From Pavona decussata (lineage: Eukaryota), in assembly GCA_977016875.1 (NCBI GenBank), contig CDRNST010000186.1, positions 2,542,001 through 2,606,000 of the forward strand: a DNA stretch of 64,000 nucleotides, read 5' to 3'. The translations under genes and the position numbers were made by a program. The notes under the pieces were generated by a model. That model had not been told where the DNA came from. It saw nothing but the letters and a program-made list of their open reading frames with translations, and did not search any database. This document shows positions 1-57,000 of the stretch, in pieces. How positions within the stretch are numbered: position 1 is the stretch's first letter; each line of letters starts with the position of its first letter.

Positions 1-342
1 CCTGCTAAACGATCAACTTTATAAAGCGATTGAATCGGTCCTGACGCTTTCATCGAATATTTTTACGTTTGAGAAGCCCTGTCAAGAAGAAAAACTTTCA
101 AAGTCTATCCAATTTCGTTTACTGAGCTGGAAAATAATTTCTTCTGCTTCCCAGCTTAACATCGACCTGCGAATAACATCTTAGACAACCAGCGAACGCA
201 GATCGCCGGAAATTAGTCTGCGTTTGCAGGCTACATCTTAGATCATCGAACGACCTTTGTATGAAATAGCTAAAAAGATATCGGAAATGCATCATATCAT
301 GCGATCAGAGTTATAAGGCGAACAAATACAATCATAACTGAC

Positions 343-2972
343 CTTTGCCTGATCAGATGTCCCTCTAGAAGAAGGTGAATCCGTGTTGGAGTAAGGGACA
401 CGAACGCACGCAAGATCTCCAGGATAAAATTCCAGTTGTCGGCTACTGCAGTAGTTCCAGGGAAGAGAAATCTGCCCACAAACAATACCATCATCCTGCT
501 CCCACACCACGTTAATTTGTTCAATGATGAAGCCGTCATTCTCCTTGACAGCTTCCGTCGCGGCCTCCATCGCAAGGACAGGCTTCCAAGCATTTATGTA
601 CTCATCAATGCTTCCATACCTCTCTCTTGACGCCTGATGTCTGGCCGTGTGAGCAAACGACTCGCGCGGGTACCTTCGATGCTCGATGCAGATATTAATG
701 TGAGTATTTATCTTGAACAACTGAATATCAGGCTCCAGTATTCCACGTATCATATGAGGGCAGAGCTGTACAGAAAAGAAATCGTAACTTTTCAAAGGAA
801 GACTTTTCTCATAAAAATGAGAAACGGTTTCACCGGAAAATGAGGGAGCCTTGTCATCGTAATGAGGATGTTTATAAGCCTCACCACGGGCGTACTCAGG
901 CGAACTGCGTTGTGGAATATCCTCAAATCTCTGTGGTGCAGACAAGATTCTCAACTTGGCTTCTGTTTGCTTGATTATCGTAGTTAGCTCGTTCTCGTCA
1001 CTGGACCTTATGGCATCCAATACACGGAGCCAAATATCAGAGGGAATCTCCACTAATTCCCCAATACCACCGTCGCATTCTCCCCGTAAGTCTCCTTGAG
1101 CGTCTGGCGCTACGTACTTCCTAAACCTCCACTTGAGAACAGTACACTTATGTCCATTCCCGTCCACGTCTTCCTCTTTTAGAGCAACTGGATTTAGATG
1201 GCTTAGGAGCAATCGCTTTTGTCTCCCTGCTAGGTGGTCATCCTCTGGCTTGGAAAAATTAAGACTGATTGACTGTTGGTCAATAGATTCAATAAAAACA
1301 CGTGTGTCATGGCACCGCTGTTGAAGCTTGGTTGCCATGTGGATTCTCTTACAATCCTTGCCAAATTTTCGTGCGTTGGCTTGTAGGAACGTTGAGCGGC
1401 GACAAACTTTTCTTATTTCATCCTTCGTCATGTTTTCTTCATAACGGCTACCAGATTGTAAACCAAGAAGGAGACGATGGACTATGATGTCCATGTACCG
1501 CCTTATTGGAGACGTAAACTGAGTGTATGATCGCATACCAAGTGAGTAGTGTTGGATCTTCTCGGAGGGCTGATCACCTTCACAGACAAACCGGGACTCG
1601 GACTGAATCCGTCTAAAATGGGACTGTGCTGCAGCAATTTGAGGGTGGTTTCTCTCGTTGCATATCAGTTGATGAGCTGTGGGAAGATCACAAGACTCTA
1701 CAGCTTTACATATTGCACCCCAAACAGACTTGTGGATTTTGAACGAAGTCTTCTCAGAATGCATCACATTTAGTGGTGGTGACTCACTCGATTCGTTCTG
1801 GAAGATCTTTGCAAATTGAAGTGACAATCTAGCGTATTTGCCGTACATTTCAACCCATTCAGCTAGTCTGTGGTCTTTAGGAGGTAGCTGTACTCTCAAA
1901 GGCGCCAATTCAGAACACTTTTTGGACAGAAATTTTGCGACTTCCTCGTTAGCAAGAATCATCATTTCTTCCACCAGCTCGTGAGCTTCAACAAACTCAC
2001 CAACCCCCTCGTTTTGCCAATGATCAAAGGCACGGTCTCCCAACCGGTAACGTCTTCGGTTTTGAGCGAGTGAGCTTAATTGCCTGACCTTTTCCATAAT
2101 TTCCTCTGAGACTTCTCTAGTGCTCACACCTCTTCCATCTATAATCACTTGAGCTTCAGTGTAACTCAGCCGACAGCAGGATCTGACAATTGTGCGTTTT
2201 ACGTTTGGTTCTTCAGTCACCTTTCCTTCCTCGTCAAGTGTGACAAACACTGATATTGCAAGACGTTCCTTGTCGGGCAGAAGACTGCAGTGGCCTTCAC
2301 TCAGCTCACGTGGCAGCATTGGGATATTTTCTTGTTCTTCCCCAGGGTAATACGATGTGCAACGCAAGAAGGCTTCATGATCCAGTGGACAGTTTGGTTT
2401 TACAAAGAAACTGACATCTGCAATGTGGATTCCTACCAGGAAAGCGGATGATGAGGTTTTTTCTATCGTCAGGGCATCATCAAGATCTAGAGATCTCGGC
2501 GGATCAATGGTAACAGCTTTACTAACCCTAGTACGACTAGCGTACTCGTTCTCAGGAATGGACCACTCAGGTGGAAATTTCTCCTTGACATATTTCATGG
2601 TGGCTTGTTTAAAAGCTCTTCTTATACCACGCTCAGCGTAGGCAATCTCCAGGCTAGTCTTCAGGTCCTCCCCTCTGGGCATTGTTTTTACGACAATTCC
2701 TAAAGGACAGCTGAAGTCTCGTCTCCACTGAAGGTACTTCACAACAAACAGGTACTTTCCGCTGAGGACCTTCTCTCTCTTCATCATGTTGACTTTAGTC
2801 GCCCTGTCGTTCTGATCCTTCTTGTAGATTGGTATATCTTTACAGCTCCTGTCTGTTAGATTCACCAGTTTTGTAGCTGACTTGTTTATGGGTACCATCA
2901 GAGCAGGGTTTTCATAGTCTGTGGTGCACACAAACTGGCGTTCGTGGGGGCTGATAATGTGCTCTAGTACAC
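343..2972 (-). CDS. Gene A exon: OB/cold-shock + RNB (RNase II/R/Dis3 family) exonuclease domain and downstream linker
   Basis: ORF 292..3039 contains TIDPPRSLDLDDAL, VGIHIADVS, HELVEEMMILANEEVA and YTQFTSPIRRYMDIIVHRLL; acceptor at 2973/2974, donor GTCAG at 342. Confidence 0.93.
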
Positions 2973-5900
2973 CTGTGTAAGGTAGACGAGTGAAGATAAA
3001 TGGAAGGTTTGTTATTTTACATTTTACATACCCACACATTTATATGTGGCTGTAAGTGGCTTTTGTGGAGGCGTAGCAACCTATCATGATTAGTGCATGA
3101 GTCTCGTACGAAACCTCAGGTGTGAATGTAACTAGTAAGAGCATTGCTCTTTGCTTTTTATTAGGACCTTCTTTACCTTGTAGTATAAATGTTAACTGGG
3201 AGTGAGACGGGGGCTCTGAGGGGATGAATATCTCCTGTCCATCGGAAGTTACAATGTTCCTAATTTTATAAATTCTAAACCGGATACCGGGGCAGCACGC
3301 TGATAATCTAACTGCTGTATGAGTTTAATGGATAACTGGTAATATGTTGTTTAACATCTTTAACGCTATACACCTACCCACAACCTTTCCTTGGACGTGA
3401 GGTTCACTGCCATCGACTTTTGAGCGGGCTTTCTTCTCAATTAGCTCCAAGACCACCTTATCTTTGTCGAACGCTTGGCGAACTCTTCCTTTGATTTGAA
3501 TGTCTGGAGTTTTGGTGTCTTCTATCTCTGCATATCCCACCTGGGATTTTTCGGGACTAAGACGAAGATTGCAGACAATGTACTTTTGCGGCTCATCGTC
3601 AAGAAGCTTCCTCAAGACAGAAGGATCCAAAAATTCCTGTTGTTTCGTGGAAGCTATAATTCGCTGAGCCCTTTCGGAGGGAGACTTGTAAATGCCAAGG
3701 TTTGTAAGACGCACCTCGACGCGACCATTGACAACTCTTACTTCTGGAAACAGATCTTTGAAATCCCCTTCTTCCTTAAATAAGTAAGGCTCCTCATTCC
3801 CAGGTGACTGAATTTTGCTGATCTTAGACATGGAGGCCTCCAAGGGAGGAAATTCAGACTCTTCAAACATTCCCCTTCTGTCTGCATCTCGCTTCAATGT
3901 CTCCTCGCATTCCTTTACAAATGCTAGAATAATTTCATCCATAAATCTCGGAGATACAGTTTCATCTTCAAGAAGGTCATCTTGGAAGTCTCCTGTTTCT
4001 GCAGTTGCATCGTCTGGTTCTTCTTCCTTCTCTTCTTGATCATCATCTTGTTTTTCTTTATGCTGTTCATCCCGGTCCTGAGCCATGTTGTAAGTATATG
4101 AGGCGTCTACTCGATCGTGCTCATCTTTTTCGTTGGCATTTTCACTTCTTTCCTGAAGACCACTTGAGTGCAACCCATAACCTTCTTCGTCTTGTATTTC
4201 TTCAAGAGCCTCTTGGTTGTTAGAGGCATTGTTTCCTCCAGACGCCGATGTGCTGACACTTTGTTCTGGCGCTGGTGGACATTTTGGGATAAAGGGCTGT
4301 GCTTCCGGGTTAAGCTGGATGCTGGCGATAGCTGCGTTTATGTCTTTCTCAAGCTCAACTATAGTTGTTCCAAACAGCCCTCCTTTTTGGTCACATCTCT
4401 TGATGTAGTCTCTCCAAATACTGCGACATTCTCCAACGGTACACAGCGATACAGGGTCACCGACAACAGCAACCAAACACCTGGCTCTAGTCACCGCTGT
4501 GTTTAGCAGTTTTGGATCAGACAAGAATTCCCAGTACAACTGTCGATCAGATCCACTGGCACGTATCTGTTCCTGCTGTGGCTTGCAGGTATGAAATGTT
4601 CGAACGGTGCTGATGAAAAGCACTCGAAATTCTTCCCCTTAATTGGGAAGCAAGTAATAAAAGCAAGCATTAAGTCTCCCACATTAGGTAATCAACGCTG
4701 CCTAGTCAGAGAATCAGTCAGTCAGTCCAGCTGTCAGTTTTTGAGCTGGAGAAATAAGTCTCTTTTATAGAGAAAAGGGTTTCCCTAGCAACCGAGACAA
4801 GGTTTCTGGTTTTTTAAACAACTTTTTCAGGTAGCATTATTCTATAATGACAGCCGTGACAATTCAAGAATCACTCCCAACAAAAAAATTAGTTTGAAAG
4901 ATCCTAAATCGATTTACAAAGTAATTTTCTGTTCAATATAAATCAAAACACAGTTTTCGAGTAATTTTTTTTTAAGCAATTTTAAAGAGTTTTTATACAC
5001 AAATTAGGAATCGTCTGTTATTCAGGCCGTTTCAACAAGAAACATTAAAAGCAAAATTTCGCTGAAATATGCTGTTCAGTAATATTTTACTATAGGAGAA
5101 CTTAAAGTAATTTCAATTTACTGTGAAATAAAATCAGAGGCATTCACGGTGAATCGCTAGGGAAACCCTCCCGCAGGCCCTTATCCGTTATTTAGGAAGA
5201 CTGCAAGTCCATATCATCCTCCATTTTTAAACCAGTCAGTCAGTCAGTCAGTCCATCAATTAGCGAGGCAGTCGATCAGTCAACTAGAATGATCACAAAA
5301 CTTTTTATGTTTCCATTTCCGTAAATTATTGATGTTCCACAAGGATAAAGCAATTTACGTTCAATTATACATTTCAAATTTTGAAGATGGTGACATTTTT
5401 TCTTTACCTTGAACATTGTGTATTGTATCCACTTTCACTTCCTTCAGATTCTCCTTCCTTAGGCTATTTCGGATGGCTTGTACCTAAAACCATTAACCCT
5501 TTTTAATATTGAGATCATAAAGTGTCATATGGGTCATATCCTATTTTAAGTTTTATGGAATTCCCTGAAGGAGAACCTGGATACATTTCAAAACTATATC
5601 TAAGTTTAGGATAAGCGGCTTTCCGCTGACACAACGCAAAAAGTCAACAATTCTTGTCAATAATGACTGGCTCAGTATTTCAGTTGAAACACAGCGTCTC
5701 AACGCTGAATGTTGTTTTGACTGACTTAATTGAGGTAGCAAGAAAACCTTGTTCAACTAGCTATTGCTTTCAACAGAAAGCTATTAGGAGCGCGATAAGC
5801 TTTGTTTCCCCTTATGATCGCTTTCAGAAATCAGAAAAATTGATTCCAATTATTGAGTCTCACCTGGTAACGATATGAGGACAGAACAGCTATATCAGAT

Positions 5901-8900
5901 CGTTTCTCAGGACCCCAAACACGAGGCCAATTGCTTGCGACCTCTTTCACTCTCTTGACGACTTCGTAAACCTCAGACAAGTTAATATAGGAGTTGTCAT
6001 GCTCCTTTTGCTCCTTGCCACGAGCTGAAAAGAACAACAGAGGACCGTACTTCGGATGCGCTGGCTGAGATTTTTGACCTCGAGGAACCAGTTTTTCCCC
6101 ATAAAAATTGTCAGAGGGAAACTTGAGGATATCCTCATGGCAACGATAATTCTCCGTCAGGAACAAGACATTGGATTGCTCTAGTGCCTCTTGCTTATCT
6201 TTGGGTTGATCTATTGCCTCTTGCTTATCTTTGCCATAGAGATCAAACAGCCGTTCAGCTAAAGATTTTTGTAGGCCCAGCCGCCTTGCTTGAGGAGAAT
6301 AAACCTCTGGGCTCATCTGAAAGAAACGGGGAGGCAAATACGTTCAGGTGTACAGGGCTCTCTAATAAACAATCGTTTTACAAATGGCGATTGATTTTCT
6401 CAAACAATTTTTTAGCCAACATAAAACAGATACCTTGCGAGATTGTTTGATAAGATATTGACTGATATAATTCGACTCTGAAGCGGCCATTTCGAATTCA
6501 TTGCACGCATCAACACCACTACACGAACGGCTAATTTTAGCCTTCAATTTTTGTACCGTACTGTCCTAGAACCATTAACCATAACAATAAACGGCGTTAA
6601 TGTGCGTGATCAGTTTAAAAGGTAACACTTCTTACGCCGTCTTTGGATAACTGTTGTATAAGTGTATATTACTATTTATGTCATTGTAACAATTGGATGT
6701 GTGCTTTTTTCAAAGGGATGTCGGGCCCACTGGCATGGTCAAGTCTCTTTTCCTGCTGACATGGTAAATATACATAAAGGGAATGGCTTGTGGCTTGTGG
6801 AAGTAGCAACTGAGAACTGCTAACCTTTACCTAAGGCTAGCAACACTTACAGAATACTGTTATTATTTACCTTTCAATGCGCACATGTAATACAATACCT
6901 GCATGTGATCACCAGTAAAGACGACCTTGGTGTTAGGCCCAGCGAAGACCAATGGTGTTAGCGCCTCCGGTTCAAGTGCTTGGGCGGCCTCGTCAATAAG
7001 AATGTGGGTAAAGAAGCCATGAAACACTTGTAGATCAAGTAGCACTTGTGATGTGCTTAGAGTGGTGATTACAACACGATGTTCAACAAGGTCGTCACGA
7101 GAAGGCAGCAAGAACAGGTCGTCTTTGATCAGACAGTAATTCCTCGCTGTTTCGGATGCCGTTTCCAACCTAAATGAAATGACCAAAATTTATATTTAAG
7201 CGATCTAAGAAATTAGCATTTTGCAAGGCTTTGCAAAATTGTCTTGCGTTTCACTTTTAGACTTGCAAAATTTGCAGTCAATGTTTTGGGATAATTATTG
7301 TCAGCTAACAGTTTATTCTAAACTAGATACACCTAAAAATTGCCATTATGAAATTGAGTTTCGAAAAACCATACTTTTGTCACAACAACAGAATTAATAA
7401 TTACTGAATTGCCTCCGAAATGATATAAGAAGCACAAGCAGATATTTTGGGGGCTGTTGCTTTTCGCAGTATGACTACTTCAACTGTAGTGTTTGACATT
7501 TACATCATTAGTAGTATCATGCTAATCGGCGGGGGGCGTGATAGCATACATAACGCCGAGGAGGCACTTTTGTAACAAAAAATGCTACCACACAACATAA
7601 ATCTTGTACCTGCCACTATTCTTTGGGACGTGCTTAACGATGTAGTTAACCGAAATATACAAGTTATTTGCAGAACAGTCAACGTACCTTCTCATAGGCT
7701 GATAAACCCTCAATGGCCTTGCTGCAGGTACGCCGTTCTGTTTGGTCAAGTACTTATCTAACAGCTCCACATGAATATCAGCTGCACGATTTGAATGGGT
7801 ACATAGGAGAATCCTATGTGACTTATCTAATTGAACCAGCAGGCGAACGGCTTGATTCAACGTGAACGTCTTTCCAGTCCCAAATGGGCCAAACACCACC
7901 AGAGGAGGAGCGTTGTACTCGGGCGAGGCAATTCGCTGGATTACCTTCTTTTGGTTCTCATTCAGTCGTTGATCGAGAAGCCATTGCCAGCGAATTTTCA
8001 CCTAAATATTTGAACGGTTGGTTAGTTCACCAAATATGACGTTTATGCTATGAGAAATGGAAGTTGTAAATTGCAAAATATTTTAAGGAAAACGAAAAAA
8101 CTTTTGAGTCAATAAAACATGTTTCGACAGAAACTTCTGTCATCCTCAGTTAAAGTACAAAGCGGTAGAAGTTGAATTTATAATAAGTAGACAAAAACGT
8201 TAATTATGGTAACGTTAATAACAAAATGAAAAATATTCTGATCCTAGTTGTTGCCATGCTCCAATCGGTAACAAAACGAGTCCACATCTCATGTAGATTA
8301 AAGAAATCCAAATAATTCCTTCCTTCTCTGAATGAAAAGCTAGACAACTATTTAAGCAGCCACCAACAGACACTTGCATAAGTTAATGTTAACATTAACG
8401 AACTTCAGCAGCAGTTTGGAAAAGGATTTTATTCTCTGGTAGCTGCTCGTAGGCTATTTTTGATCTTATTCGCAACGACTTGATCTATGAAAAATGAGAT
8501 AAATGGTATAAATATGTGGTCATTGCCAAGGAAGGGGCCTGACGTAAAGGCTTGGGTTCTTTTAGCCCCTTGTGACATATCCTGAGTATGTTTTTTGGTA
8601 CGAATTTTTAACTACTTACTTCACTCCCGACAGCAACGGAAACGCTTGGCTCTGGAAAAACAAGGCGCTTTAACTGCCCCGTTGTAAGCCGATCAACGGC
8701 CGCGTGCATCTTACAAAGCGGCCAGCGGTTCAACTGGAACTGGGAATTAACAGTAATATCACAAGTGTCATAGAGCTGTAGGTCAGAGCGCATTTTGGAT
8801 GACAGTCTCAGCACAACACATTCACTCTCTACTTTCTCAACAGGGGCCTCATAGACTTTGTTAGAGACGCTTAGAGCCTGCTGTAGCCATACGGAGCTGA

Positions 8901-11900
8901 CGTTGCGGTAGAGAAGGCGACCTGCTGCATCGTCAGGTCTTAGGGCATCTTCCTCTTGTAGGTAGAGAACACCAAACAGCTCATTGTCCAAAGCGCATTT
9001 CATCCCAGTCATCTCATCAAAGATGTTCCGTTGAGCATGTAACTGTGTGTTGGTCAGAGTGTAGCTATAAAGAAAGGAAACCATAATTAGCCCGCTATAC
9101 TCGCTTTAGTTCTAAAAAGCACTTTGAATTGCCCTGTGGGAAAATATGTCAAAATAAAGTGTCCGCTAAACAAAAATTAAAGCACCAAAAAGCCATGGAC
9201 ACGTTTTTAAAGAGTCATGCAATAGCCAATGCAAATCAATATAATCAAAATCATATGAACAGCTTTCGTTTAATCTGACTGTAGCTTTGGTTGTTCTTGA
9301 TCCACTTTTTCTTCGTTTGGTCACTGAGTGGCGCCTTAGTTTAGCCCCAGACCATTTTTATCCGTGCTGTTGACCATTACCAATAATGAGTGCAAATGTT
9401 AATGTAATTACCTCCACTCATAGTATTAATGGTTGTTATCTGGTTACTGCATTACTTTTAAAGACGTTTATGCCTGGTTGTAGGAATGCGAATTTGCACG
9501 GGTGAATTTGTAAAAATTCTGCCCTATGGTAGTCAAAGTAAAATAAAACTCCTAGACGACAATTCTGAATTTGGCGGCTGCTCTCACCGTGAAATTTCAT
9601 CCTTCATGAAACCTTCCTCCACAAACAGCAGTTGATGGATGACTCGTTTGTAGTTATCGAGATTCAATTCGCTAGCTACAACGTCCACCTGTTTACGAAG
9701 GCTGTATGTTCTTGATAAGTGTTCTCCCTGGAGAGCCTCGCCTGTTCCATGGACGAACCTGACTACCTCCATGGAACTTTCATCCCATATGGTAGCAGCA
9801 GGAGTATGCTGCGAGACAATGGGAGTTCGTGACAACGATTCGCTTCGTACATCTGCGTTAAGTCTCTGCACCAGGTACGGTTTTCTTCCAAAGTCGAATA
9901 CAATGCATTGATCGAAATTTCCATACAGGGCGGAATTGAATGAGACAGTGACAGACACTTTTATTCTCCCAGAAAGATTAACTTCTGGAGCTTTGTACCA
10001 GAACTCTTTCAGCTTAGCCGTGTAACATGTCCTGTACATTTCACAGCCACGATTCTCCTGATAGCAGCCGACGTGAATTTCCGACAGCTGATAGCAATTG
10101 TGGTATCTATGAAGTAGAAGAACGTGACGTAGGCATCCTACGTCGTTGGCCTTCAAAATTGAAAAAAAAAAAAAGAATCACATAGTCATTTCAGGTAACG
10201 TCGTATTTTAAAGCTTCAAAATTTCGCGATATAATCGAAAGGTAGTGACGAATGTCATTTCACGGTTGTAAATGCCACGGGATGAGACAAAACACCATAA
10301 TGTATGCCTCTGTTATTTCTTTTATGTAGAAGTGGAGTAACTGAGTTTGGTAAAGGAATTAATAAATTACTTAATATATCACCTTGGTGTCTTGACGACT
10401 TTTTTAATTACTATAATTTTATAAACGACTTTTTTCATAACGATTCGTTCTTGCTTTTGAAACCAGGGATATTCTCCGCCTTAGTTGGTTCATCGGTGCA
10501 AAAGAAATTCTCGGAATTTCTGAGTGAAAATTAATAAACAACCTTAGCTTTTGAAGTTCCATAAACTCCTCATAAATAACAATTTACCAAGATTTATGGG
10601 GATAAAAATATCAGTATCGGCATTTTAAAATACGCGTTTTTATTGTTTATGTTTTTGTTGTTTTCTATGGCACAAGTCACAAGCTACCCAATTAAGTAAC
10701 TCAGTGGAGAACGTCGTTGAAAAGTTCACAAGTTTACTGACCTTGAATATAAGGTTGAAAGTCCACTGACACGCATGCGTATCATTATTGTCTTGAAGTG
10801 TTATACTACGGTCTGGAGGTGTGCAGGTAATTTCAACTCCTGGAAGATACTCCGCAAGCTGTGTAAAAAAGATGACATTTTTGGATTTACAATCAATCGA
10901 TGGCATTTGGGGAGTGAATACATTTTTGTAAAATTGTGGTTATTAAAATCGCTCTCTGATTTTTTACTTTGTTGACTTAAATAAGGCAACAAAAACAGAG
11001 CCACATATAATTTTGTGGCTTTTTTTTTTCTTTTTTTAAGGAGTAAAAAAAAAGAACACGTTTCCTCAACTTACATAATTTAAAGAAAAATACCAGAGGG
11101 TAATTGGAACAATTCACTCGTACTTATGTGGATGCTCGCCTGCAGGTTGGGTGCAGGTAAACTTTTGAATTCTTCCAACCATTCTCCCTTTCGTATTTGT
11201 AGTAAGTTAGCGAACTAGCCTCAGACTGACAAAAATTCAGTTTTGGCTATAGAAGGTTTTGTGCTTTAACTAGCCATTTTGGTTGGTAAAGCATTGGAAT
11301 GCTGGACGGAAAACAAAGATGAAAATTATTTAATAACCACAAAAGGAAATCAAAAGGACAAGACTACGCCCGGACGCCGGTTTTTGTGCTGTATGACTAG
11401 AGTTGCGGCTTTTCATGTTAAGGTGGACTTGAAATTTTATTCGCATATACAATTTTTAAACAGTAAAAAAACCTTCACGCGTGGGACAGATTCTTTCTTA
11501 CCTCCCTTCCTCCCCTTTTCCTGAAAGTGAAAGTGCGGCTGGTAAAAGTGTTGTTTTGGCTAGTAAAATCAGACCTGTACTAGCCACTGAGCTAGTGAGC
11601 TAAAAAGTTAGCCTCGAGCCCTGAACCTCCCTGGGAAATATATCCGAGCAAAAGAAAACAATTCACTTACGTCTTCAGCTGGACCTTTTAAGATCTCTGA
11701 TGCCATTTCCATAGAAACAATTTCCTCCTTCTCTTGGAGTTCTTTTGTTCGTTTTTCCCTTTTTTTGCGTTGGTATTCTTGTTCCCATTCGTTTAGTTCT
11801 TGGATGCTATGTGCAAAGATGCATCCCCGTCCAAATCTGCATCGCTCACGCGTGTAACAACTGCAAATAAGATAATAACCATAGCTTTTCCAAAACGTGG

Positions 11901-14900
11901 TCATACAGACGTTACCATTATCGGTGAATATACAAATAATTTAAGTGCAAGTTGACACATAAAACCTATGAAAAAGAAGTTTAAAAGATTTCAAATAAAA
12001 TACATGATACCAAGTAAAAAAATTCCTTGGGGAGCATTTTAACCCCATTATATTATTACTGTCTAGCTCCTATGTGCTTCTTTAGGCCTAATCAAACGTT
12101 CAGATGGATTTCTCTAATCTCATTGATACCACCAACTAGTCGGTGATACTACCCAATTTTCGTGTTACATAGCGATTGAAGTGAGACATTATCTCATGCG
12201 TTTTAAATGTTTACATGACGAGCTCCCCTAGAGTTTGAAAGCTTACAACAAGTTGGAACAGAATTTTACCTGTCCGGATATTCTAGCGAAAAGCTATCTT
12301 TACGAAAATAGTGAATCTATAGATACCTCCTGCACAGTTTGTAGGCGCCATTTGTAACTCCCGGTGGGGAAGGTCTGTACCATAGCTGTGGTGAAGATTG
12401 GCTAGAAGAACAACTTTCGCTCGTTGCCTTTCCAAGTGATCTCATGAGAGTTTCTCGTGGAGTTGGAAGAACTAACATATATGGAAAAAAAAAAAAACAA
12501 ACACAAATGCCTCTTATAGCCAATTTCTCCTCACACCTAATTTTTTTAGTCTGATGCAAATAAAATGAACTGTTTGCTCTAAAATTCAGTGATTCTGATG
12601 TCTAGTGTTCTAGTGCCTAGCAGCGAACTTCGAAAACTTACCCCCTTCTCTCTCCATTGTCCACATGAGTAATTCTACTTGACCGTGAGGAAACGAGCAC
12701 GTTGTCCTTAGACAGCTGTTTACAGCATATTGACGGCATACTGAGAAGGCCACATTTGCACGTACTTTTTCGATTGGATATGACCTAATAACTTGCCACT
12801 CTTTACTGTTATCATTCCAGAAAGCGTACTTTAGTTTTGAGCGATTCTCACAGCCTTTGCAGGCCTTAGTCTTTTCGTAGATGCTTGCTGGTCTCTTAAG
12901 ATGCTTTTGGAGGAAGTCGTCACAGACAACGAATACATTATCTGGTATCTTTCTGGAATCGTTCAATGAGTAAGGAGGTTGTTCAGCAACTGTCTTCTTA
13001 GATGTCAGGCCGCCACTTTGAAGCATTTTGGAAGTCTCAGTGGTCAAGTTATCCAAGGATGGGGCAGGTGTCGATCTTCCAGATGCGTTAGAATGCGTAA
13101 CCGTCGAGGACGGCCTGGTGTTTTCGAAGTTATTTGTGGGAATCCTTTCCGTAGAATTAACCCCTGTACCTATCATCTGGGTAAGTACCTCAGGTCGAGT
13201 GGGGAAGGTGGAGGAGGACGCATTCCTAGGTATATGTGCAGTGGACCTTTGAGTGTTGGAAGCAGCCTCCACTTCAGCTATTTGAGAAGACACTATCATG
13301 GGTTTCGCCGCGGACAAGACTTCACTAAACGAAGCACCAGATGTATCCTTAGAAGTCCACACTGAAGTCGTAGTATTGCAAGTGGTTTTTGTCATAGCTG
13401 TTTGCGAGGAAACAGCTCCTAACATGGGGAATTCTTCCATAGCTGTCAATGTCAAGCTGGAAGAGACAGCAAAATCATCTCTTCTTTCTTGTGAGGTACC
13501 TGTGTTCGGTACAGGAGGATGTGTGGTCGACGATTCTCGAGCTGATGACAAAATTCTCCTGGATAAAGCGCCGACTGAAAAACTTTCTTGAGGTGTAGGA
13601 AGAACTGTTGAGAAGTTAGAAACATTTAAGACGTAAGGTAGAAGCATTCAAAGATTGTCAATCAAGTAAAGTAAAATAACTTTGAATTTGTTCTTTGAAG
13701 TCTGCCATCTTATTCTCAATTTCTTAGCAGAAGGTGACGCAAGTTAAAAAGTCACTCCATCCTGGAGTTTCTGTTAAACCATCGAGATTTTACCCCTGTA
13801 GCTTCTAATGGGTACCCATTTTTACAACCGAAGCAGTGAGGGTTGACCGGAGATGCTAAGCATCTAAAAGATGGCACTCGAATAATGACTAAAGACATCC
13901 ACCTTCCAATTTAGTTGCCATAGATCAGTGCTCCTTCTGAGTTCTCACAAGACTGGCATCACTATTTTTAATGAATGAAACGTGATTAATATACTCACCA
14001 CCTTGCCGTTCCATTGTCCACATAGTTAATTCAACTTTTCCATGAGGAAAGGTACATGGTTCCTTTGGACAACGCATGTTAGCGGAGAAATGTCGGCAGA
14101 CATCCAAAGTAACCTTTGGGTGAACCTTAAAAGCAGGGTATGGCCTTATTTCTTGCCAGTATCGCTTGATGTTGTTCCATAAAGCGTATTTCATCAGGCC
14201 ACGATTTTCACAAGCTTTACAGGTCTTGAGTGTACAAATGCCCCGTAGAAAGTGGTCACACACAACAAAGACCCCCTCAGGAATCTTTCTAGAATCATTG
14301 AACTCCAGCGGTTGCCTAGCAAGAGGACTTTCTGACTTGTTGTTGGTTTTATAGTCCTCAGAAAGGGTGACTGGTTTGGAAGAGCTCTCACAACCTCCAT
14401 GCTTTGTCGAACAAGAAAGGAACGAATCCGTGCTGCTGCCACTACTAAGAGCACCAGGCATCCCTTGAGAAGAGATCTCTTCAAGTCGCTCAGTGTTGAT
14501 ATTTTTTGACTCCTCCCTTTCAGACCTCTGCGAAGTTTCCTGGAGTAGCGGTTTCATAGGCGGCGCTCTTAGCCCGTTAGATTCTTCAAAATTATCGCCT
14601 GCAATGTCAAAAGTGTTTTGAGGACCTTGAGCTGACATTTGAGATGAAACGTTCCCCAAGACGGGAAATTCAGAACAACTGGAGAGGTCTGGAATTTCTT
14701 CTTTTCTACGGGTTGCACTAGCCTGTACTTCGAGAATAGGGAGGTGATGAATCTGCTGCAGTTGTGTTTTTGTGCTCCGCTTAGGGACTGGCTGGGCTGT
14801 TGCTGCTTCATTTGGGGATGGTAATTCTGTGGTCATAATGGCTCTTTGCGGTGGTTGATCTTGAAGCTGGCGATGAGGATCTGGTACATTTGTGATAGCT

Positions 14901-49145: not shown

Positions 49146-50954
49146 CTAAGGATAAAAAATATAACCTTTAATCTGGAATAGCCGTTCCCCTTCCTGAGCC
49201 GTCTATTGATAGAACTCTAATCTATCTACGAATCAAAACATTTAAGTTTAATTTTAATCCTAATAATGTTAACCGTTAGAGTAAATGCAAGGTTGATACG
49301 CTCTGACGATGGTGTAACGGTGGGAACGCCAGCTATTGTATCTCGTGATGGCGGTCAATTTACCTTATCAACTCATTTGATAAAAAGACAAATTTTGGAT
49401 TGGAATTAGTTAGAGCTACCAGTATTAAATTACTGTAGAGCATCAAGCATAAGAAATGGATTAGACAATTGTAATTAGCAATGGTTCCACTTATGGTTCG
49501 GATTAGCGACAACAGTCTAATTAAGGATAAAGAACATGACGTGTACGGTTGTAAATTAGCTGACTAACCGCTTCTTACCAGGCAGTTGTAACGCATTCCC
49601 CAGACAAATGTTATGAGCAAGAGGAGTGAGATCCCCTGATTGTTCCATATGTGGCAGTTTTATTAAAGTTGAAATCATTCGTCTGGCAAGTTAAAGAACA
49701 GACAATTTGTTATTGATTGGTTGGGTATTGAACTTTCATTACAGAAAGTCCACTGTGTTGCCATTGTCTGATTTTAACATTAATTACTTGCAAATTGAAC
49801 AAAACAACAAGTCCTCATATAATCTTGAAGCTATAAAATGGGGCAGAACATACAGGGGGAAAAGGAAAGAGGACAGACATCCTTGTGACTCTCAGTGTCA
49901 ATAAAACTGGAAAACTACTAGAGCTATTTGATTCCAAAGGCATTCCAATATATTGTAATGTATTCCCCTTCCAAAAAACAAATTTATTGAATTTACGTTT
50001 GCTAAAAGGTCACAAAAAATTACCTCGAGGGGATAGTCTGCTTTATTATCTCCAGCGTACAAGTCCGACTGTTTCCATTTGCAAGACCTTTAGGGACTTT
50101 CATTGAGTTTTGGAAAACCCTCAGCGTGTATTTCGTCAGTGATTCTTCAGCAAGATGAAAGATACAATGGCCCACCCAATAGCTCTTCCCGACCGAGCTT
50201 TCCGCACATTCCTTGTCGTCACTTTTACTTGCATTTGCATTGTGGTTTTCAGAGGCCATAGCGAATGCTTGCACATCTACGGCTTCCTTTCCCATTTCTT
50301 TGCAGAAGTCATGTTTTCTATCTGATGGCTCAGGGTTCGACAGACAGCCTGAGGAGGGCGTTACACAACGAACTTTTACACAAGCGTAATCACCAGGAAT
50401 GATCTGTATCTGCCTCGTTTTGCAAAAGTTATCGTTAAGTTGAAACTCGCCGAAAATGCCACCACCTTCATCTTTTCTCCAATTCACTTCAATGTCTTGC
50501 AGAATTATGGTATCGTCGTTCCTTACGGCCACGGTTGCAGCTTCCATTTCAAGCACCGGCCTCCAAAGATAAACATATCTATTGATAGTCCGATAGCTTG
50601 GTTGGGACGCTTTGTTTGATGCAGCAGTTGAAAAGCATTTATCGGCAAGCTTCCTATGTTCAAGGCAGACGTCAATTCCAGGTGCGAGATTGAAGAGCTG
50701 AATTTCGGGTGACATTAGACCTCCAGAGTCGTTTGCTGAAAGTTGCACGGTGACACTGTCGGAAACGTTTAACACAAGGGACGTCTCAACGAAATGCACC
50801 GACGTATCATACTGTTCATTGGAAGGTAAAATTTCTTCCCCTTCTTTGTCCACGTCTTTGTCTTCCTCATGACTATCAATCTCACCATCAAAGTACTCAT
50901 TATCCTCCCCATTACTACAGTCAGGGTTTTCCTCATCCTCATCACCATCATCAA

Positions 50955-51003
<49 letters not shown>

Positions 51004-54000
51004 TTCTTCTTCTTCTTCTTCTTCATCTTCTTCTTCTTCTTCATAGCCTTCTTTTAAAAACAGTTCACAATTTCGTCTTTCTTCCTCTCTTCTTAATCGT
51101 GACATCTCTTCCCTCTGGTCAGCAATTATTTCATCCAAATCCTTTAAGCGTTCGCTTAGTTTGCTCTCATCACCTGATTTAACTGCGTATAAGACCTCCA
51201 GCCAACGGTGGCTTGGAATGTAGTAACCTTTTTCGCTGACAGAAAACAAACTCTGAATTCTGATCCGATCTTCGCGGAGATGTCTCTCTGGGTTTCTACT
51301 GCGCTTCGCGCGTCTGACATTTTCTGTAGAAGCGTCGTAGATTCTAAGCTTCCACTTTAGCTCTAGGCATCTGGAAGTTTCGTCAATCTGTGGTTGCTCA
51401 ATTGGGCCAAGGTGGCTAATCTGAATTCGCCTCTGTTTCTGTGAAAGAAATTGGTTTAAATCAGATAAAACTTGCAGCTGAATGAAATCTTCTTCGATCA
51501 TTTCCACGATGGCGGAGAACTCACAACTTCCTTCACTGAGTTTTACAGCAACTTCAACTCGGGCGCAATCTTTTTCAAACTTGCTTGATTTGTCAGAAAG
51601 AAATGCGCACCTACGATAAACAGTGGGTATATCGTCGGGTACCAGTTCTCGGCCATCAGTCTCAAGCAACAAACGATGAACTACAATGTCAAGATACCGA
51701 CGAATTGGAGAGGTGAAGCGAGTGTATTCATGAACATTCAAAGACCAGTGCTTTCTGTCATCCGTCTGCACTTGAGCAGCTATAACATCTTCAGCTCCTC
51801 TTTGCAAGGAGTTAAAAAACGAATGCGCGACTGCCAGTTGGGGATAGATGTTATCATTACAAATCCAAAGTTTCAATTCCCTCTTATCCGGTTTGCGGCG
51901 AGCTTTACAAATAAGGCTCCACGTGGGGGATGGCAGAAAGAACTTCTCCACGCATTCAACTTCTTCAGACAAATGCCTGTTGAGGGAAAGAGACAGCCTG
52001 GCACAATTTCCGAAACTCCCTTGCCACTCATTAAGTTTGCGCGTCTTCGGGGGACGCTGGATTCTCAGCGGTGACAGGTCAGCTTTCGTTCTCACAAGGT
52101 GCTTTGCTACAGCAGTGTTGGCCAGGATCATCATTTCCTCTACCAGCTCATGAGCCTCAACGTCCTCCTTTCGGTCTGCATGGTCGAAGTGAAAGTACGA
52201 TCCGTCAGACAGACGCAATTTTCTTCTTTTCTGGGCTAAGGAGTTTAGCATGCGGATACTTTCTTCGATCTCCGAAGTCAGTTGTCCATCTTCGCGCCTA
52301 CAATGAACAGTCTTTCCAAGTATGACCTGCTGTGCTTGGGAATACGTCAAACGACACTGCGACTTCACAATGGATCTACAAAATTCAAGCTCCTCTCCTC
52401 CCTGAATACAACCAGTTTGATCCAACGTCAGATAAACGGACACTGTCAGTCGATCTTGATTCGGCAAAAGACTGCAAATGTCATGGCTTAACGCCACGGG
52501 AAGCATAAGGACGTCTCCAAGTCGACTACCTCCAAAGTACGAGGTACCTCTTCTCTGGGCCTCACGATCGATTTGACTCCCCACTGGAACAAAGTATGAC
52601 ACATCGGCAATATGAATTCCGACTTTACAATATCCATTCTCTAACCTTTCGATTGTCAATGCATCATCGAGAGCTTTACTTCCGGGAGGATCAATTGTGA
52701 AGGCGTTCTTTGCCAGTGGACGGCTATTTCTTTCGTGAGGGATACTTGACCACCTCTCTGTGAATCTTTCTAACTCTTTGCAAACGTCTCCTGGAAATTC
52801 GTCTTTAAGTTTATATTCAGCTTTAAGAACCTTGAATGCGTCAGAAAGATCATTTCCCTTTCGAAACGCCTTCGTCACTATGCCAAGAGGATAAGGGAAT
52901 TCTAGTCTCCATTGTAAATATTGTACGACAAAGAAGAATTTACCGCTCAAAGCTTCTTGTAGGGGAAGGGTTTTCACACGCACTGCTTTTTCATCTGAAC
53001 CGGGTTCAATTTTTCTGTAAATTGGAACTCCCTTACAACTTTCATCGGTCAGGTTAGCGATTGGTGTCATTGACTTGTTGATGGGATACATTATCCGTGG
53101 GTTATCCCTGGAAATTGTGCATACAAACTGTCGCTCACGAAGATTGATCGCATGGTGGCGAACACCACAGATTTTGCCCTTCAGTCCTTCAGAAGCACCT
53201 GTAAGTTCCGAGGAATCACTCGAAAGCTTCTGGGATAACTTAACTACCACGACGTCACGATCAAATGTCTGGCGTGTGTCTCCTTCTATTATGATATCTT
53301 CACTCTCGGCATCAGGTATCTCACCACACAAAGTTCGTGCTTTGTCGAAGGTAACTCTCAACGTGCATTCACGATAGAGCTCAGGTTGTTGTTGAAGCAA
53401 GCGATCAAGATAATCCTGTTGTAAACATTCTTGGTTTTGCACTTTAGGGGAACGAACAAGGCGTTCTGTTCTTTCGCTGTATTTATAATCTATGTTTACC
53501 AGAAAAATCTTGGTTTTGCCTTTCTTTGTTTTCATTTTTATGTCTTCGTGAACTATTTTGTTTTCTGTGGTATTGGAATCTAATCTTTTCCTGCTTCTCG
53601 TGGCGTTTTCAGGTAAGGGATCTATCTCGTCCTTGTCTTGCTCTGCATTTTCTCTAGATTCTGCCTCCTTTGCTTCCTCTTTGCTTTTTGTTTCATCTCT
53701 AATTTTCCCTTTCACCTTCATTTCTTCGCACTTATTCTTCAAGGCTTGGATGATAGGATCAATATGCCGTGGGGGGACAGTTTCATCCACGTCTTCATAT
53801 TCTGCAAAATCGTCAGCACTACCTAGGCCGTCACTCATGGACATTTCGTCACCAGCATCGTCGGATTCAGATGCACAATCATGTTCACTCCCGGCTTTCT
53901 CAGCTAAATGGCTTTTTGCTTCAAAAGAAAAGTCGTTTTTCTTTTTTGTGTCATTTGGATCATCCTCCTTGGGAAGTAAAGAAGAATTGGAGTAAGGCAA

Positions 54001-57000
54001 ATCACTTACATCCGAAACAGACGGTTGACCGGTCCCTGATGGTACAAACTCGGCAGCGTTGACATTGAGTCCACTCTCGGAAATGCTTTCTTCGAGCTCG
54101 TAGTGTTCAAAGCCAAACATTTTCCCTTCCTGACTACATCGCTTGATGAATTCCTCCCATAAACCTTGGCAATCACCAACAGTTCTTAAGGAAAATGGAT
54201 CTCCAACCACTGCGATGAGAGATTGCGCTCGAGTGAGAGCAGTGTTGAGCAGCTTGGGGTCTGATAAAAAGTACAGGTAAGGGCTGTCACTCTCATCTGT
54301 TCCGGAACCCTGCTTCCCCACGCAAGTGTGGAACGTTCGAACTGTGCTTACGAAGAGAGCTCGGAACTCTTTTCCTGATGGAAATTTAACAAATGGAGGT
54401 CAATGTTGACAGTGAAGTAGGAATAGCGTTCAACATTTAAATTTTTTTTTTAAAGAAGCAAATTATAGTCAGCAGCGTGATATAGACAAAAGCTTTGATA
54501 ATAACCGATATATACAAATTTTAAATACTGGACCTCGATCAAGGTTGCATCTTATTCATTAAATACTTCTCCCTTTGCTCACAAATTGTACTAATATATT
54601 CCGAGTCAATTTACCTTGAATGTTTTCAATAGTTTCAACGTCTACAGCTCCAAGACCAATTTTTCTGAGGCCATCTCGAATTGTTTTGACCTATTTAAAA
54701 GGAATAAAAGTAAATCAGTGAGGCAGTTATATCCTTGCGGCCGCGTACAATAAGGACAATTTAGTTGGTCATAGACAGACCGCTCGTTGGGTTGTTTCAG
54801 TTCAACAGTTCAGTACAGAGCCCAGAAAATTACAAGTGGAACAGGCTGCTCGTGTCAGTAACCTTTGGCAACCTATGGTAGATCCTCTACCCGTGGAAAC
54901 TTTGCACTACAGCGCAGACTTCTTCATAGCAAGGACAGGCCGCTTTTAAGTTCCCCTTTATAGTCATCGCTGTCATCATTATCATCATCATTATGGATAT
55001 CTTTAATTTTTGTCATTATTATCTTTATTACTACCTTTAAAGACATTCAACTGTTATCGATCCTATGCGTGGAAGGAATCGCTTTAAAATTAAATTTCCA
55101 TCGCCAACCACTTGTTATTTAACCTTTTCTCGATTAGCCAAAACACAATTCGCGCATCTTGAGTGAAAGATACTAACAACTATCTTCCTGTAGTGCTGTT
55201 GTTTGATAGATTATATTACGAACTTAACGTTCAGAAAACTTGTCGCTAAGAAATGTTGCATGAAGACTGAGAATTGGTGGTTATATGTGTATGCGTATCG
55301 TACTGACCTGATAGCTATATGATGAAACGACTGCTATTTGTTTAAGATTCTTCGTACCCCATTCTTTCGGCCAGCAATCGCAAAGCTCCTTCACTCGCTT
55401 TACAACTTCGTTAACCTCTGCTAAGTTACGATATGACGCATGGCTCTCTTCGATCTCTTCTTTGCCAAGAGCGGAATAGAACACAAGTGGACCAAACTGT
55501 GGGTGAAGAGGTTGGTCACTACCAGAGGAAAGCTCACCACCGTAAAACATGTCGGACGAGAACTGAAGCACCTGTTTGTTTGAGCGGTAGTTTTCTGTCA
55601 GCAAAATAAGATGGGGATCTAGTTTTGACCCGTCTTCACGTCTTTGATAATCGTAAAAGAGTCTTTCCTGTAAGGAAACTTGGAATCCCCACTTCTTTGC
55701 TTGAGGAGAGAACACATCGGGACTCATCTAAGAATGACAAAAGGCAGCATTTCATTGCATCTAATGCACAAAGTGGATACTATTCGTAAATATGGGGATG
55801 ATCGAATAATCAGGGTAGAATACTGATTAGTGGATTAAAAACTAGCACCATTGATTCGTCCACTAATAAAAACATGGCTAGATGACTATTCATGGTAAGA
55901 CGAAACATATGACTAAAAAGGTTTTTCTGAGGAAATTCACTGAAGTTGATAACCAAGACATATTTTTTGAAATTAATCTGGAATCTGCAATCAAATTCTC
56001 TCACCGATGCCCAAAACCTGCTCCACAAGCTCCGGTGAGCTGCAAGACTTTTAGAAAAAGATATTTACAGATGCAAAGAGATCGTATACCTGCATGTGGT
56101 CTCCCGTGAAAACCACTTTGGTATTATTCCCTGCTAGGGTGAGTGGCGCTAATGTCTCCGTCTCCAGCGCTTGTGCCGCCTCATCAATAAGGATGTGTGA
56201 AAAAAATCCTCGATGAAATTCCATGTCAAAAAGAGCTCGGGACATGCCCAGAGTAGTTACAACAACCCGGTGACGTATCACGTCTTCACGAGTTGGAAGT
56301 CTGAAGGCTTGCGCTGGCGTACCTTTGTCTGCAATGAGACAATACTCCTTCACCGTGTCAGAAACAGTGGCCAGTTTGCGGAAAGGTGTGTAAATCCTTA
56401 AAGGTCTACATGCTGTTATGCCGTGATCATGTTTCAGGTAGTGGTTCAGTAGTTCCACATGTATATCCGCAGCGCTGTTTGAGTGAGTGCAGATGAGCAC
56501 CCGGTTGTTTTGGTTTACTGAGATACGACGAATGGCTTGATTTAGCGTGAACGTCTTCCCAGTGCCAAATGGACCGAATACCACGAGGGGAGGCGCATCA
56601 ATCGCGGGAGCGGATATTTTCTTAATAATTTCTCTCTGATCCTCGTTTAATTTTGAGTCAAGAATCCATAGGAGATGTTGAATCTGAAATGAATGTAAGA
56701 CGACGTTTAGTTGGATAGCCAAAGAATTTAACGCTGTAAAAATAAAATACCTAATACGAATTTGGCAGTTTTTAAGACGGGACCGGAACAATGAAGCCCG
56801 CCTTAGTTGACATGTTTCCTAGAAGTATCGTCTTCAAACAATGCAATGGACCTTTGAGATTACAAAAACACCCATCACAATAATTTACATTGGAATGTAT
56901 TAAGTAAACGTCATTTTTATCCAAAGGCTTACATTTTTCTCATATTTGTCATCTCTAAACTACTTACAAGTTCTATACCTGCTAAACGTAAAAAGTACCT

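What the first reader, a model, noticed from the sequence alone, without database searches (positions are those of the whole stretch)
4285..4314. PAM2 (PABP-binding) motif right after helicase 1 in gene A
Seen: QLNPEAQPFIP fits the PAM2 pattern LNxxAxxFxP and sits at the start of the disordered linker after helicase motif VI. Established: HELZ (HELZ1) has a PAM2 after its helicase but no RNB; I do not recall a PAM2 in vertebrate HELZ2. Inference: the protein may dock on PABP-coated poly(A) tails and present the 3' end to its own RNB nuclease. This could be a HELZ/HELZ2 ancestral combination.
Basis: partly seen in the sequence, partly recalled or inferred. Interest (0 to 1): 0.7.

Follow-up and report, generated by a model that had tools for sequence, protein, structure and literature searches.

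The report
PABP-docking motif in coral HELZ2-like nuclease
A coral RNA helicase-nuclease gene of the HELZ2 type carries, right after its first helicase, a short conserved peptide of the kind that binds poly(A)-binding protein; it sits where the tested motif of the related helicase HELZ sits, and vertebrate HELZ2 lacks it.

Summary
Observation confirmed. Window 4285-4314 (minus strand) encodes LNPEAQPFIP, inside an exon (3376-4636) that spliced transcript contigs cover.

It is not a chance match:
- The strict pattern occurs twice in the six-frame translation, against 0.045 expected. The second copy is at the aligned site of tandem paralogue gene B, a site the scan had already noted (s1-480841).
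- All 7 clustered HELZ2-like paralogues in this genome have the motif.
- 111 of 120 gene-A orthologues and 45 of 45 gene-B orthologues match. L and F are invariant, N, P, A and P are at least 90% conserved, and the next ~100 residues are unconserved.

The same aligned columns hold a PAM2 in HELZ2-like proteins of amphioxus, hemichordates and echinoderms (near-matches in a sponge and octocorals). They also hold it in true HELZ from fish to flies, where F1107 is needed for PABPC1 binding. Snake, gar and mammal-like HELZ2, Lottia HELZ2 and an eighth coral paralogue lack it.

The coral encodes a PABPC MLLE domain very close to the human one.

Reading: a real, ancestral PAM2 of the HELZ/HELZ2 helicase module. 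It probably docks the helicase-RNB nuclease on PABP-bound poly(A) RNA. Binding and the 3'-end hand-off are untested. No paper in the library links HELZ2 with PAM2 or MLLE.

The parts
4285..4314 (-). PAM2 core LNPEAQPFIP of gene A (exon-ORF residues 104-113)
   Evidence: L104 and F111 are invariant, N105, P106, A108 and P113 are >=90% conserved in 69 orthologues. 111/120 orthologues match the pattern at a fixed offset.
4456..4503 (-). Helicase 1 motif VI through VVGD (NTAVTRARCLVAVVGD)
   Evidence: AAA_12 C-terminal match; aligned with HELZ ...SLVAVVGD1050
4315..4455 (-). 47-residue C-terminal extension of helicase 1 (PxxLCxxGxC..W....C...), shared with HELZ and ending in the last helix before the PAM2
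   Evidence: alignment; model helices 585-597 and 606-619 at pLDDT >90 falling to 67
3991..4284 (-). Unconserved acidic linker after the PAM2 (98 residues)
   Evidence: no conserved column between residues 114 and 211; composition; coil in both models
3835..3990 (-). Second conserved block of the linker (acidic stretch plus predicted helix), function unknown
   Evidence: conserved between genes A and B and among orthologues; helix 225-252 in a low-confidence model
3376..3630 (-). OB_HELZ2 domain (PF25049)
   Evidence: 50.8 bits, cut-off 29.3; exon end at 3376 from RNA joints
3376..4636 (-). The exon that carries the helicase 1 C-terminus, PAM2, linker and OB fold
   Evidence: joints 2970/3376 and 4636/5407 with CT..AC ends in contigs of runs X1, X5 and X13
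292..2970 (-). RNB exon of gene A. RNB domain about 1468-2523; catalytic motif DPPRSLDLDD at 2476-2505, all four Asp present. Lower exon end not determined.
   Evidence: PF00773, 245 bits
5407..8001 (-). Helicase 1 core exons 5407-5481, 5862-6316, 6899-7167 and 7686-8001 (GTGKT, DEAAQ)
   Evidence: RNA joints; AAA_11/AAA_12 matches; translations
11809..14098 (-). Three CCCH zinc-finger patterns of gene A's front end (11809-11865, 12685-12738, 14042-14098)
   Evidence: regex C-x7/8-C-x4/5-C-x3-H. Pfam gave no match at E<=0.01.
54040..54069 (-). PAM2 of tandem paralogue gene B, LNVNAAEFVP, at the aligned position
   Evidence: 45/45 orthologues keep it; best PDB matches are the PAIP1 and PAIP2 PAM2 peptides
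50020..54321 (-). Gene B large open frame: helicase 1 C-terminus, PAM2, linker, OB and RNB in one piece

Best explanation
The peptide is a genuine PAM2-type short linear motif in an expressed HELZ2-like gene with CCCH fingers, a UPF1-like helicase 1, PAM2, an acidic linker, an OB fold and an intact RNB exonuclease. The second helicase lies off the window. The motif sits at the end of the folded helicase, where the chain becomes disordered, and it is homologous to the tested PAM2 of HELZ. Shown here: the sequence, its expression, its selective conservation, its positional homology with HELZ, and a conserved PABPC MLLE domain in the same genome. Inferred: the motif binds the MLLE domain of cytoplasmic poly(A)-binding protein, with the Leu and the Phe as the two anchors. 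That would concentrate the enzyme on polyadenylated RNA near its 3' end. More speculative: the tethered helicase and 3'-5' RNB nuclease then attack that RNA from the tail, in the way PAM2-bearing partners bring the PAN2-PAN3 and CCR4-NOT deadenylases to PABP. The motif most likely belongs to the common ancestor of the HELZ and HELZ2 helicase module. It was lost in vertebrate and mollusc HELZ2 and in one coral paralogue.
For: Sequence and chance. Paralogues: gene B at the aligned site, while only 31% of the exon is identical; all 7 clustered paralogues in the genome. Orthologues: 111/120 for gene A, the other 9 differing by one residue at the same site; 45/45 for gene B. Conservation falls exactly on the PAM2 determinant positions, with variable x positions and an unconserved linker after them. 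Expression and splicing. Boundary position: (pLDDT 85.6 overall; last helix 606-619, motif 622-631 in coil with pLDDT 54 falling below 50). Wider spread at offset +46 to +49 from VVGD: Branchiostoma, Diadema, Acanthaster, Patiria, Ptychodera and Antedon, with near-matches in Anneissia, Glandiceps, B. lanceolatum, Corticium and octocorals. HELZ from gar, amphioxus, hemichordate, crinoid, Limulus, Drosophila and a snail has Y.LNP.APEF.P at +50. Human HELZ-N ends at ...VAVVGD1050, the LxxLAP part of the motif ends at P1105, and F1107A/V abolishes PABPC1 binding (PMC3135610, PMC6769256). The partner exists: a coral MLLE exon matches human PABPC1 MLLE at E 6e-32, including chains solved with PAM2 peptides. 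The gene B peptide's top two PDB matches are the PAIP1 and PAIP2 PAM2 peptides. Gene A's RNB catalytic motif is intact.
Against: The gene A peptide found nothing in the PDB at E<=10. It has Pro rather than Glu before the Phe; many orthologues have P, T, S or A there. The motif follows the last helix by only about 3 residues, so access could be restricted. In human HELZ the PAM2 was dispensable for the decay, repression and translation read-outs tested, so a conserved PAM2 need not drive the main activity. PABP covers and protects poly(A), so docking does not by itself give the RNB site a free 3' end. Several lineages carry LDP instead of LN/SP, which is outside the ELM pattern as I recall it. 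The representative search used a query that contained the motif, so its ranking favours motif-bearing hits.
Confidence: 0.7

Rival explanations
1. The motif is a real MLLE ligand, but its partner is not PABPC. It could be the MLLE domain of the UBR5/HYD-type ubiquitin ligase, or the unusual multi-MLLE protein encoded on contig C176. The motif would then control turnover or assembly of the enzyme rather than poly(A) targeting.
For: The genome holds several MLLE-coding loci besides the PABPC-like one, including at least 5 tandem MLLE repeats at C176:114.4-118.2 kb. UBR5 MLLE chains are among the PDB relatives of the coral MLLE, and PDB 3ntw pairs UBR5 MLLE with the PAIP1 peptide.
Against: The homologous HELZ motif binds PABPC1 in cells and in pull-downs. 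PABPC is by far the most abundant MLLE protein (established knowledge). Nothing here links the multi-MLLE gene to HELZ2-like genes.
Confidence: 0.15
2. The conserved peptide is not an MLLE ligand. It is kept for another reason, such as an intramolecular contact that caps the helicase C-terminal extension or a docking site for an unrelated partner, and only resembles PAM2.
For: It directly follows the last helix of the fold. Some lineages carry departures from the pattern (LDP, LRP, A-to-S, A-to-T). No binding data exist for any HELZ2-like protein.
Against: The positions under constraint are exactly the PAM2 determinant positions and the x positions vary freely. The aligned motif in HELZ is a proven PABPC1 ligand that depends on the aligned Phe. 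The model gives it low confidence and no packing.
Confidence: 0.12
3. It is a chance match of a short degenerate pattern in a low-complexity linker.
For: The loose ELM-type pattern alone gives 5 hits against 2.3 expected in the window. Three of them are clearly spurious: two in non-gene frames and one inside the helicase core.
Against: The strict pattern gives 2 observed against 0.045 expected, both at homologous sites. It is invariant or nearly so in about 165 orthologues and 7 paralogues, while the adjoining linker is free to vary. It is present in the same columns across phyla.
Confidence: 0.01

Closest known systems
PAM2 of HELZ (human residues about 1098-1110; F1107)
   Same: Same alignment columns. 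The motif Leu is 50 residues after the VVGD of motif VI in HELZ, 48 in gene A and 44 in gene B. Both share the CxxGxC..W..C extension before it and a disordered region after it, and the helicase cores are 40-53% identical. The HELZ motif binds PABPC1 through the aligned Phe.
   Different: HELZ has no OB, RNB or second helicase, and its tail recruits CCR4-NOT. The HELZ motif is nearly fixed as Y.LNPLAPEF[VI]PR and overlaps an LxxLAP and a YxxxxL-hydrophobic signature. Gene A has neither signature, and has Pro before the Phe.
Vertebrate HELZ2 (interferon-induced 3'-5' exoribonuclease, PMC10516660)
   Same: Two UPF1-like helicases flanking an OB_HELZ2 and an RNB domain, with CCCH fingers in front. 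The Pfam signatures are shared.
   Different: Snake, gar and the mammal-like sequences have an acidic Ser-rich stretch at the aligned site; snake, gar and lemming have no PAM2 anywhere in the protein. Neither of the two main HELZ2 papers reports a PAM2 or direct PABP binding: the first has no 'PABP', the second names PABPC1 only as an RNA-dependent ORF1p partner.
PAIP1 and PAIP2 PAM2 peptides solved on the PABC/MLLE domain (PDB 1jh4, 1jgn, 3ntw)
   Same: LSVNAPEFYP and LNPNAKEFVP against LNVNAAEFVP (gene B) and LNPEAQPFIP (gene A). L, N/S, A, F and P fall at the same spacing, and these are the top PDB hits for the gene B peptide.
   Different: The matches are statistically weak because the peptides are short (E 0.44 and 1.1). 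Gene A gave no hit. PAIPs regulate translation and are not enzymes.
PAM2-mediated recruitment of deadenylases (PAN3 of PAN2-PAN3; TOB and GW182 for CCR4-NOT); from established knowledge, not tested here
   Same: A PAM2 brings a 3'-5' poly(A)-directed nuclease activity to PABP-bound tails.
   Different: There the motif and the nuclease are on separate subunits and the nucleases are DEDD/EEP deadenylases. Here the motif, a helicase and a processive RNB-type exonuclease would be on one polypeptide.

Membership tests
PAM2 motif (ELM LIG_PAM2_1 type MLLE ligand) | Sequence pattern: L/F/P, N/S, small hydrophobic, x, A, x, x, F/Y, x, P | tested here: met
   LNPEAQPFIP and LNVNAAEFVP match. The PAIP1 and PAIP2 peptides returned by the PDB search show the same spacing.
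PAM2 motif (ELM LIG_PAM2_1 type MLLE ligand) | Lies in an accessible, disordered stretch | tested here: met
   By prediction only. In the model of the orthologue P0047:217-880 the motif (model residues 622-631) is coil, right after helix 606-619, and pLDDT falls 93, 67, 54, 48. The linker after it is unconserved and acidic.
PAM2 motif (ELM LIG_PAM2_1 type MLLE ligand) | Determinant residues conserved in orthologues while the x positions vary | tested here: met
   L and F invariant; N, P, A and P >=90% conserved in 69 sequences. 29 different 13-mers share the pattern.
PAM2 motif (ELM LIG_PAM2_1 type MLLE ligand) | An MLLE-domain partner exists in the same organism | tested here: met
   PF00658 matches at 101.9 bits with KITGMLLE. 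E 6e-32 to human PABPC1 MLLE chains.
PAM2 motif (ELM LIG_PAM2_1 type MLLE ligand) | Phe-dependent binding to the MLLE domain | not testable with these tools
   Needs peptide binding or a complex prediction. Only the homologous HELZ motif has such data.
HELZ2 (helicase with zinc finger 2, 3'-5' exoribonuclease) | OB_HELZ2 fold followed by an RNB domain | tested here: met
   PF25049 at 50.8 bits and PF00773 at 245 bits, both above cut-off. RNB motif DPPRSLDLDD is intact.
HELZ2 (helicase with zinc finger 2, 3'-5' exoribonuclease) | UPF1-like SF1 helicase upstream of the RNB | tested here: met
   AAA_11 and AAA_12 matches on the exons. The orthologue's model matches UPF1, IGHMBP2 and SETX structures at E about 1e-33.
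HELZ2 (helicase with zinc finger 2, 3'-5' exoribonuclease) | Second UPF1-like helicase downstream of the RNB | tested here: inconclusive
   For gene A it lies beyond the window start. One short open frame in L024 looks like a helicase piece, and a retroelement follows it. Gene B has helicase-2-like frames in the window, e.g. 44703-45014. Orthologue P0047 shows only one motif I and one motif VI by my regex.
HELZ2 (helicase with zinc finger 2, 3'-5' exoribonuclease) | N-terminal CCCH zinc fingers | tested here: inconclusive
   Three CCCH spacings found by regex, but no Pfam match at E<=0.01.
HELZ (helicase with zinc finger) | Single helicase with a long low-complexity C-terminal half and no OB or RNB | tested here: not met
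   OB_HELZ2 and RNB follow the linker, so gene A is not HELZ, although its helicase and PAM2 are HELZ-like.

The most novel reading that the evidence does not exclude
The ancestral animal HELZ/HELZ2 protein was a self-contained poly(A)-tail-guided RNA destroyer: CCCH fingers, a helicase, a PABP-docking PAM2 and a processive RNB exonuclease on one chain. Corals would keep this form and have multiplied it into a tandem array, perhaps against polyadenylated viral or retroelement RNA. HELZ would be the branch that kept the PAM2 and lost or never gained the nuclease. Vertebrate HELZ2 would be the branch that kept the nuclease and lost PABP docking. No separate HELZ gene was detected in this coral genome, which fits the HELZ2-like genes covering both roles there.
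Probability: 0.3. Interest if true: 0.65.

Novelty: new member of a known kind. Interest (0 to 1): 0.45.

Why it matters
PAM2 motifs route factors to the poly(A) tail. Finding one at a homologous site in HELZ2-like nucleases of corals, echinoderms, hemichordates and amphioxus ties HELZ and HELZ2 together as one ancient helicase module. It also suggests that the HELZ2 lineage once found its substrates through PABP. That gives a concrete and cheap hypothesis about how invertebrate HELZ2-like enzymes, expanded here to at least 8 copies, choose RNA. It also raises the question of what replaced this targeting in the vertebrate interferon-induced enzyme. It is an incremental insight, not a new mechanism.

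Tried and rejected
- The gene A 25-mer found no PDB chain at E<=10, and the whole exon found no solved relative.
- Folding the exon alone gave a poor model (pLDDT 41), so I used the orthologue's whole helicase instead.
- The loose ELM-type pattern also hit 27134-27172 and 27649-27687 (plus-strand frames with no gene) and 55680-55718 (DVFSPQAKKWGFQ, inside the helicase core of gene B, where gene A has no Trp). I rejected all three as false positives.
- A separate HELZ gene was sought in the genome with hemichordate HELZ pieces. Only HELZ2-like loci came back. This is not proof of absence, because only the best candidates are scored.
- Papers joining HELZ2 with PAM2 or MLLE: none relevant. The ELM expression itself is not quoted in any paper text I could read, so it rests on my memory.
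- The HELZ LxxLAP and eIF4E-like signatures are absent from gene A, so those readings do not transfer.
- The trees were built with the quick method. Deep branches are weakly supported, so I do not claim an order of events beyond parsimony.
The helicase of gene A was studied exon by exon and through the annotated orthologue P0047.
- N runs in the window were left untouched.
Full report
**What is there.**
The finding lies on the minus strand. Translating window 3325-4623 in reverse gives the C-terminal end of a UPF1-like helicase (motif V LFISTVRT, motif VI NTAVTRAR, then VVGD). A 47-residue extension follows, and then IQLNPEAQPFIPK. LNPEAQPFIP is exactly 4285-4314.

Pfam finds the AAA_12 C-terminus and an OB_HELZ2 domain in this open frame, and a strong RNB domain in the next one, 292-3039. 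Upstream exons carry the rest of helicase 1 (AAA_11/AAA_12, GTGKT, DEAAQ) and three CCCH spacings. Gene A is therefore a HELZ2-like gene. Its nearest named relatives are coral proteins from Orbicella, Desmophyllum and Oculina, so the genome is a stony coral's.

**Expression.**
Assembled contigs of public runs were laid on window 2600-8500. In three of the four runs they skip 2971-3375, 4637-5406, 5482-5861, 6317-6898 and 7168-7685. The skipped pieces end in CT..AC, which is GT..AG on the minus strand. These contigs are therefore spliced transcripts. The motif lies in an exon spanning 3376-4636, which one 6.4-kb contig covers without a break.

**Chance.**
The pattern LN[PIVTAFL].A..F.P occurs twice in the six-frame translation of the window, against 0.045 expected from shuffled frames. 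The second hit, LNVNAAEFVP at 54040-54069, lies in a second HELZ2-like gene (gene B) and aligns with the first, although the two exons share only 31% identity. The scan had already noted that second site (s1-480841).

**Conservation near home.**
- The genome holds eight loci of this kind. Seven lie on the same contig within 0.5 Mb, all on the same strand. Four are gene-A-like and three are gene-B-like.
- All seven have the motif at the site. The eighth, on another contig, has the helicase, OB and RNB but no PAM2 anywhere.
- Among database proteins, 45 of 45 gene-B orthologues (52-90% identical) keep the motif.
- 111 of 120 gene-A orthologues (52-94% identical) match, at a fixed distance of 63 residues from motif VI. 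The other nine differ by one residue at the same place.
- In an alignment of 69 gene-A orthologues, L104 and F111 are invariant and N105, P106, A108 and P113 are at least 90% conserved. The four x positions vary, and no column is conserved for the next 98 residues.

This is the signature expected of selection on a PAM2 and not on a folded element.

**Structural context.**
The exon alone folded poorly. The whole helicase 1 region of the annotated Orbicella orthologue, with 26 aligned sequences, gave a confident model (pLDDT 85.6, pTM 0.83) of UPF1-like fold. The last helix is model residues 606-619. The motif (622-631) is coil, and confidence falls from 93 to 67, 54 and 48 across it.

**Wider distribution.**
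An exhaustive search with the 125 residues ending just after the motif returned 150 representatives. I anchored each on the VVGD and looked 38-60 residues further on. Of 138 that could be judged, 104 have a full match, 18 a near-match and 16 none.
- Among the hits that also contain an RNB domain, 9 match, 6 nearly match and 7 do not.
- Named matches are HELZ2-like proteins of Branchiostoma, the urchin Diadema, the starfish Acanthaster and Patiria, the hemichordate Ptychodera and the crinoid Antedon.
- Near-matches are Anneissia and Glandiceps (LDP), B. lanceolatum (LRP), the sponge Corticium (Ser for Ala) and octocorals (LDP).
- Snake, gar and mammal-like HELZ2 and the two Lottia proteins have nothing at the site; snake, gar and lemming have no PAM2 anywhere in the protein.
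- The query contained the motif, so the ranking favours motif-bearing hits. The named full-length proteins are still informative.

**Link to HELZ.**
Twenty of 21 long hits without an RNB have Y.LNP.APEF.P exactly 50 residues after VVGD. The ones I looked up are annotated HELZ, from gar, amphioxus, a hemichordate, a crinoid, Limulus, Drosophila, a sea spider, a snail and a tick.

The published human constructs fix the same geometry. HELZ-N ends at D1050, and its reverse primer encodes ...SLVAVVGD. HELZ-C starts PIALCSIG. The LxxLAP part of the motif ends at P1105, which puts its Leu at 1100, and F1107A or F1107V abolishes PABPC1 binding. The motif Leu is thus 50 residues after VVGD in HELZ, 48 in gene A and 44 in gene B, and the residues in between align.

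HELZ helicases are 40-42% identical to the coral helicase 1, which is as close as HELZ2-like proteins of other phyla. I built a tree of the helicase with the motif cut off, rooted on the second helicase of HELZ2-like proteins. HELZ and all helicase 1 sequences form one group (support 100). HELZ is a clade within or beside them (99), and the deep order is unresolved. A tree of the RNB region places vertebrate, Lottia and some unnamed PAM2-less sequences on one side (96) and almost all PAM2 or near-PAM2 sequences on the other. As few as three changes of state are needed. Both trees used the quick method. I read them only as showing that the motif is old and was lost a few times.

**The partner.**
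The coral genome encodes MLLE domains. The best match (101.9 bits, KITGMLLE) aligns with human PABPC1 MLLE at E 6e-32, including chains solved with PAM2 peptides. The gene B peptide's two best PDB matches are the PAIP1 and PAIP2 PAM2 peptides. The gene A peptide found nothing.

**Mechanism.**
- Shown: an expressed, selectively conserved PAM2-pattern peptide at the HELZ position, an intact RNB catalytic motif in gene A (DPPRSLDLDD), and a conserved PABPC MLLE.
- Inferred with fair confidence: the peptide binds that MLLE, through the Leu and the Phe.
- More speculative: this tethers the helicase-nuclease to polyadenylated RNA so that the 3'-5' RNB can start at the tail, as PAM2-bearing partners do for PAN2-PAN3 and CCR4-NOT (established knowledge).
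- Cautions: in human HELZ the PAM2 was dispensable for the read-outs tested. PABP shields poly(A). Other MLLE proteins, UBR5-like or the odd multi-MLLE gene on C176, could be the partner.

**Novelty.**
No paper in the library joins HELZ2 with PAM2 or MLLE. The paper that characterises HELZ2 as an exoribonuclease notes corals and molluscs as having HELZ2 but says nothing about PABP. The motif class and the HELZ instance are known, so this is a new member of a known kind, with a modest evolutionary point attached.

**Limits.**
- No binding test was possible.
- Human HELZ2 itself was not examined.
- The ELM expression is from memory.
- The absence of HELZ from the coral is only a failure to find it.

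Noticed in passing
own genome G000:C176:114401-118217 (loci L011-L014): One 368-residue open frame and its neighbours encode at least five tandem MLLE (PF00658) repeats (KLTGILLE, KITGMLLE and so on). A multi-MLLE protein is unusual and could be another receptor for PAM2 motifs.
   Followed up: partly
own genome G000:C186:2.54-3.06 Mb (L001-L007) and C183:234-248 kb (L008, L009): Seven HELZ2-like paralogues lie in one same-strand array. There are two exon layouts: A-type, with the PAM2/OB exon separate from the RNB exon, and B-type, with one open frame of about 1450 residues. An eighth, divergent copy on another contig lacks the PAM2.
   Followed up: partly
own genome, whole: Searching with hemichordate HELZ (fingers, helicase, PAM2) returned only the HELZ2-like loci, at 48-53% identity over the helicase core. 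No separate HELZ gene was detected in this coral assembly.
   Followed up: partly
window 50020-54321 (-), gene B RNB motif: Gene B reads DPPGSKALDD where gene A reads DPPRSLDLDD: the second catalytic Asp is Ala. Activity was not assessed.
   Followed up: partly
window 3835-3990 (-): A second conserved block inside the linker: an acidic run, then ETV.PR..D.II.A...CEE, predicted helical. It is conserved between genes A and B and among orthologues. Its function is unknown; it may be another docking element.
   Followed up: no
L024 (G000:C186:2532001-2542000), just beyond the window start: Downstream of gene A's RNB exon there is a short helicase-like open frame (7559-7771, minus), then a non-LTR reverse-transcriptase open frame (4620-6543, minus), and a GPCR-like open frame (1575-2591, plus). 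Whether gene A's second helicase is intact was not settled.
   Followed up: partly
window 5161-5357: Contig depth rises sharply here inside the intron 4637-5406 (275 in run X5), with odd joints at 4727/5233 and 4733/5234. This is probably a repeat or another transcribed element.
   Followed up: no
octocoral-like hits P0258-P0302; Anneissia P0292/P0353; Glandiceps P0360: Several lineages consistently carry LDP.A..F.P instead of LNP.A..F.P at the site. The Asn-to-Asp variant is outside the ELM pattern as I recall it, but it is conserved, so it may be a tolerated or retuned form.
   Followed up: no
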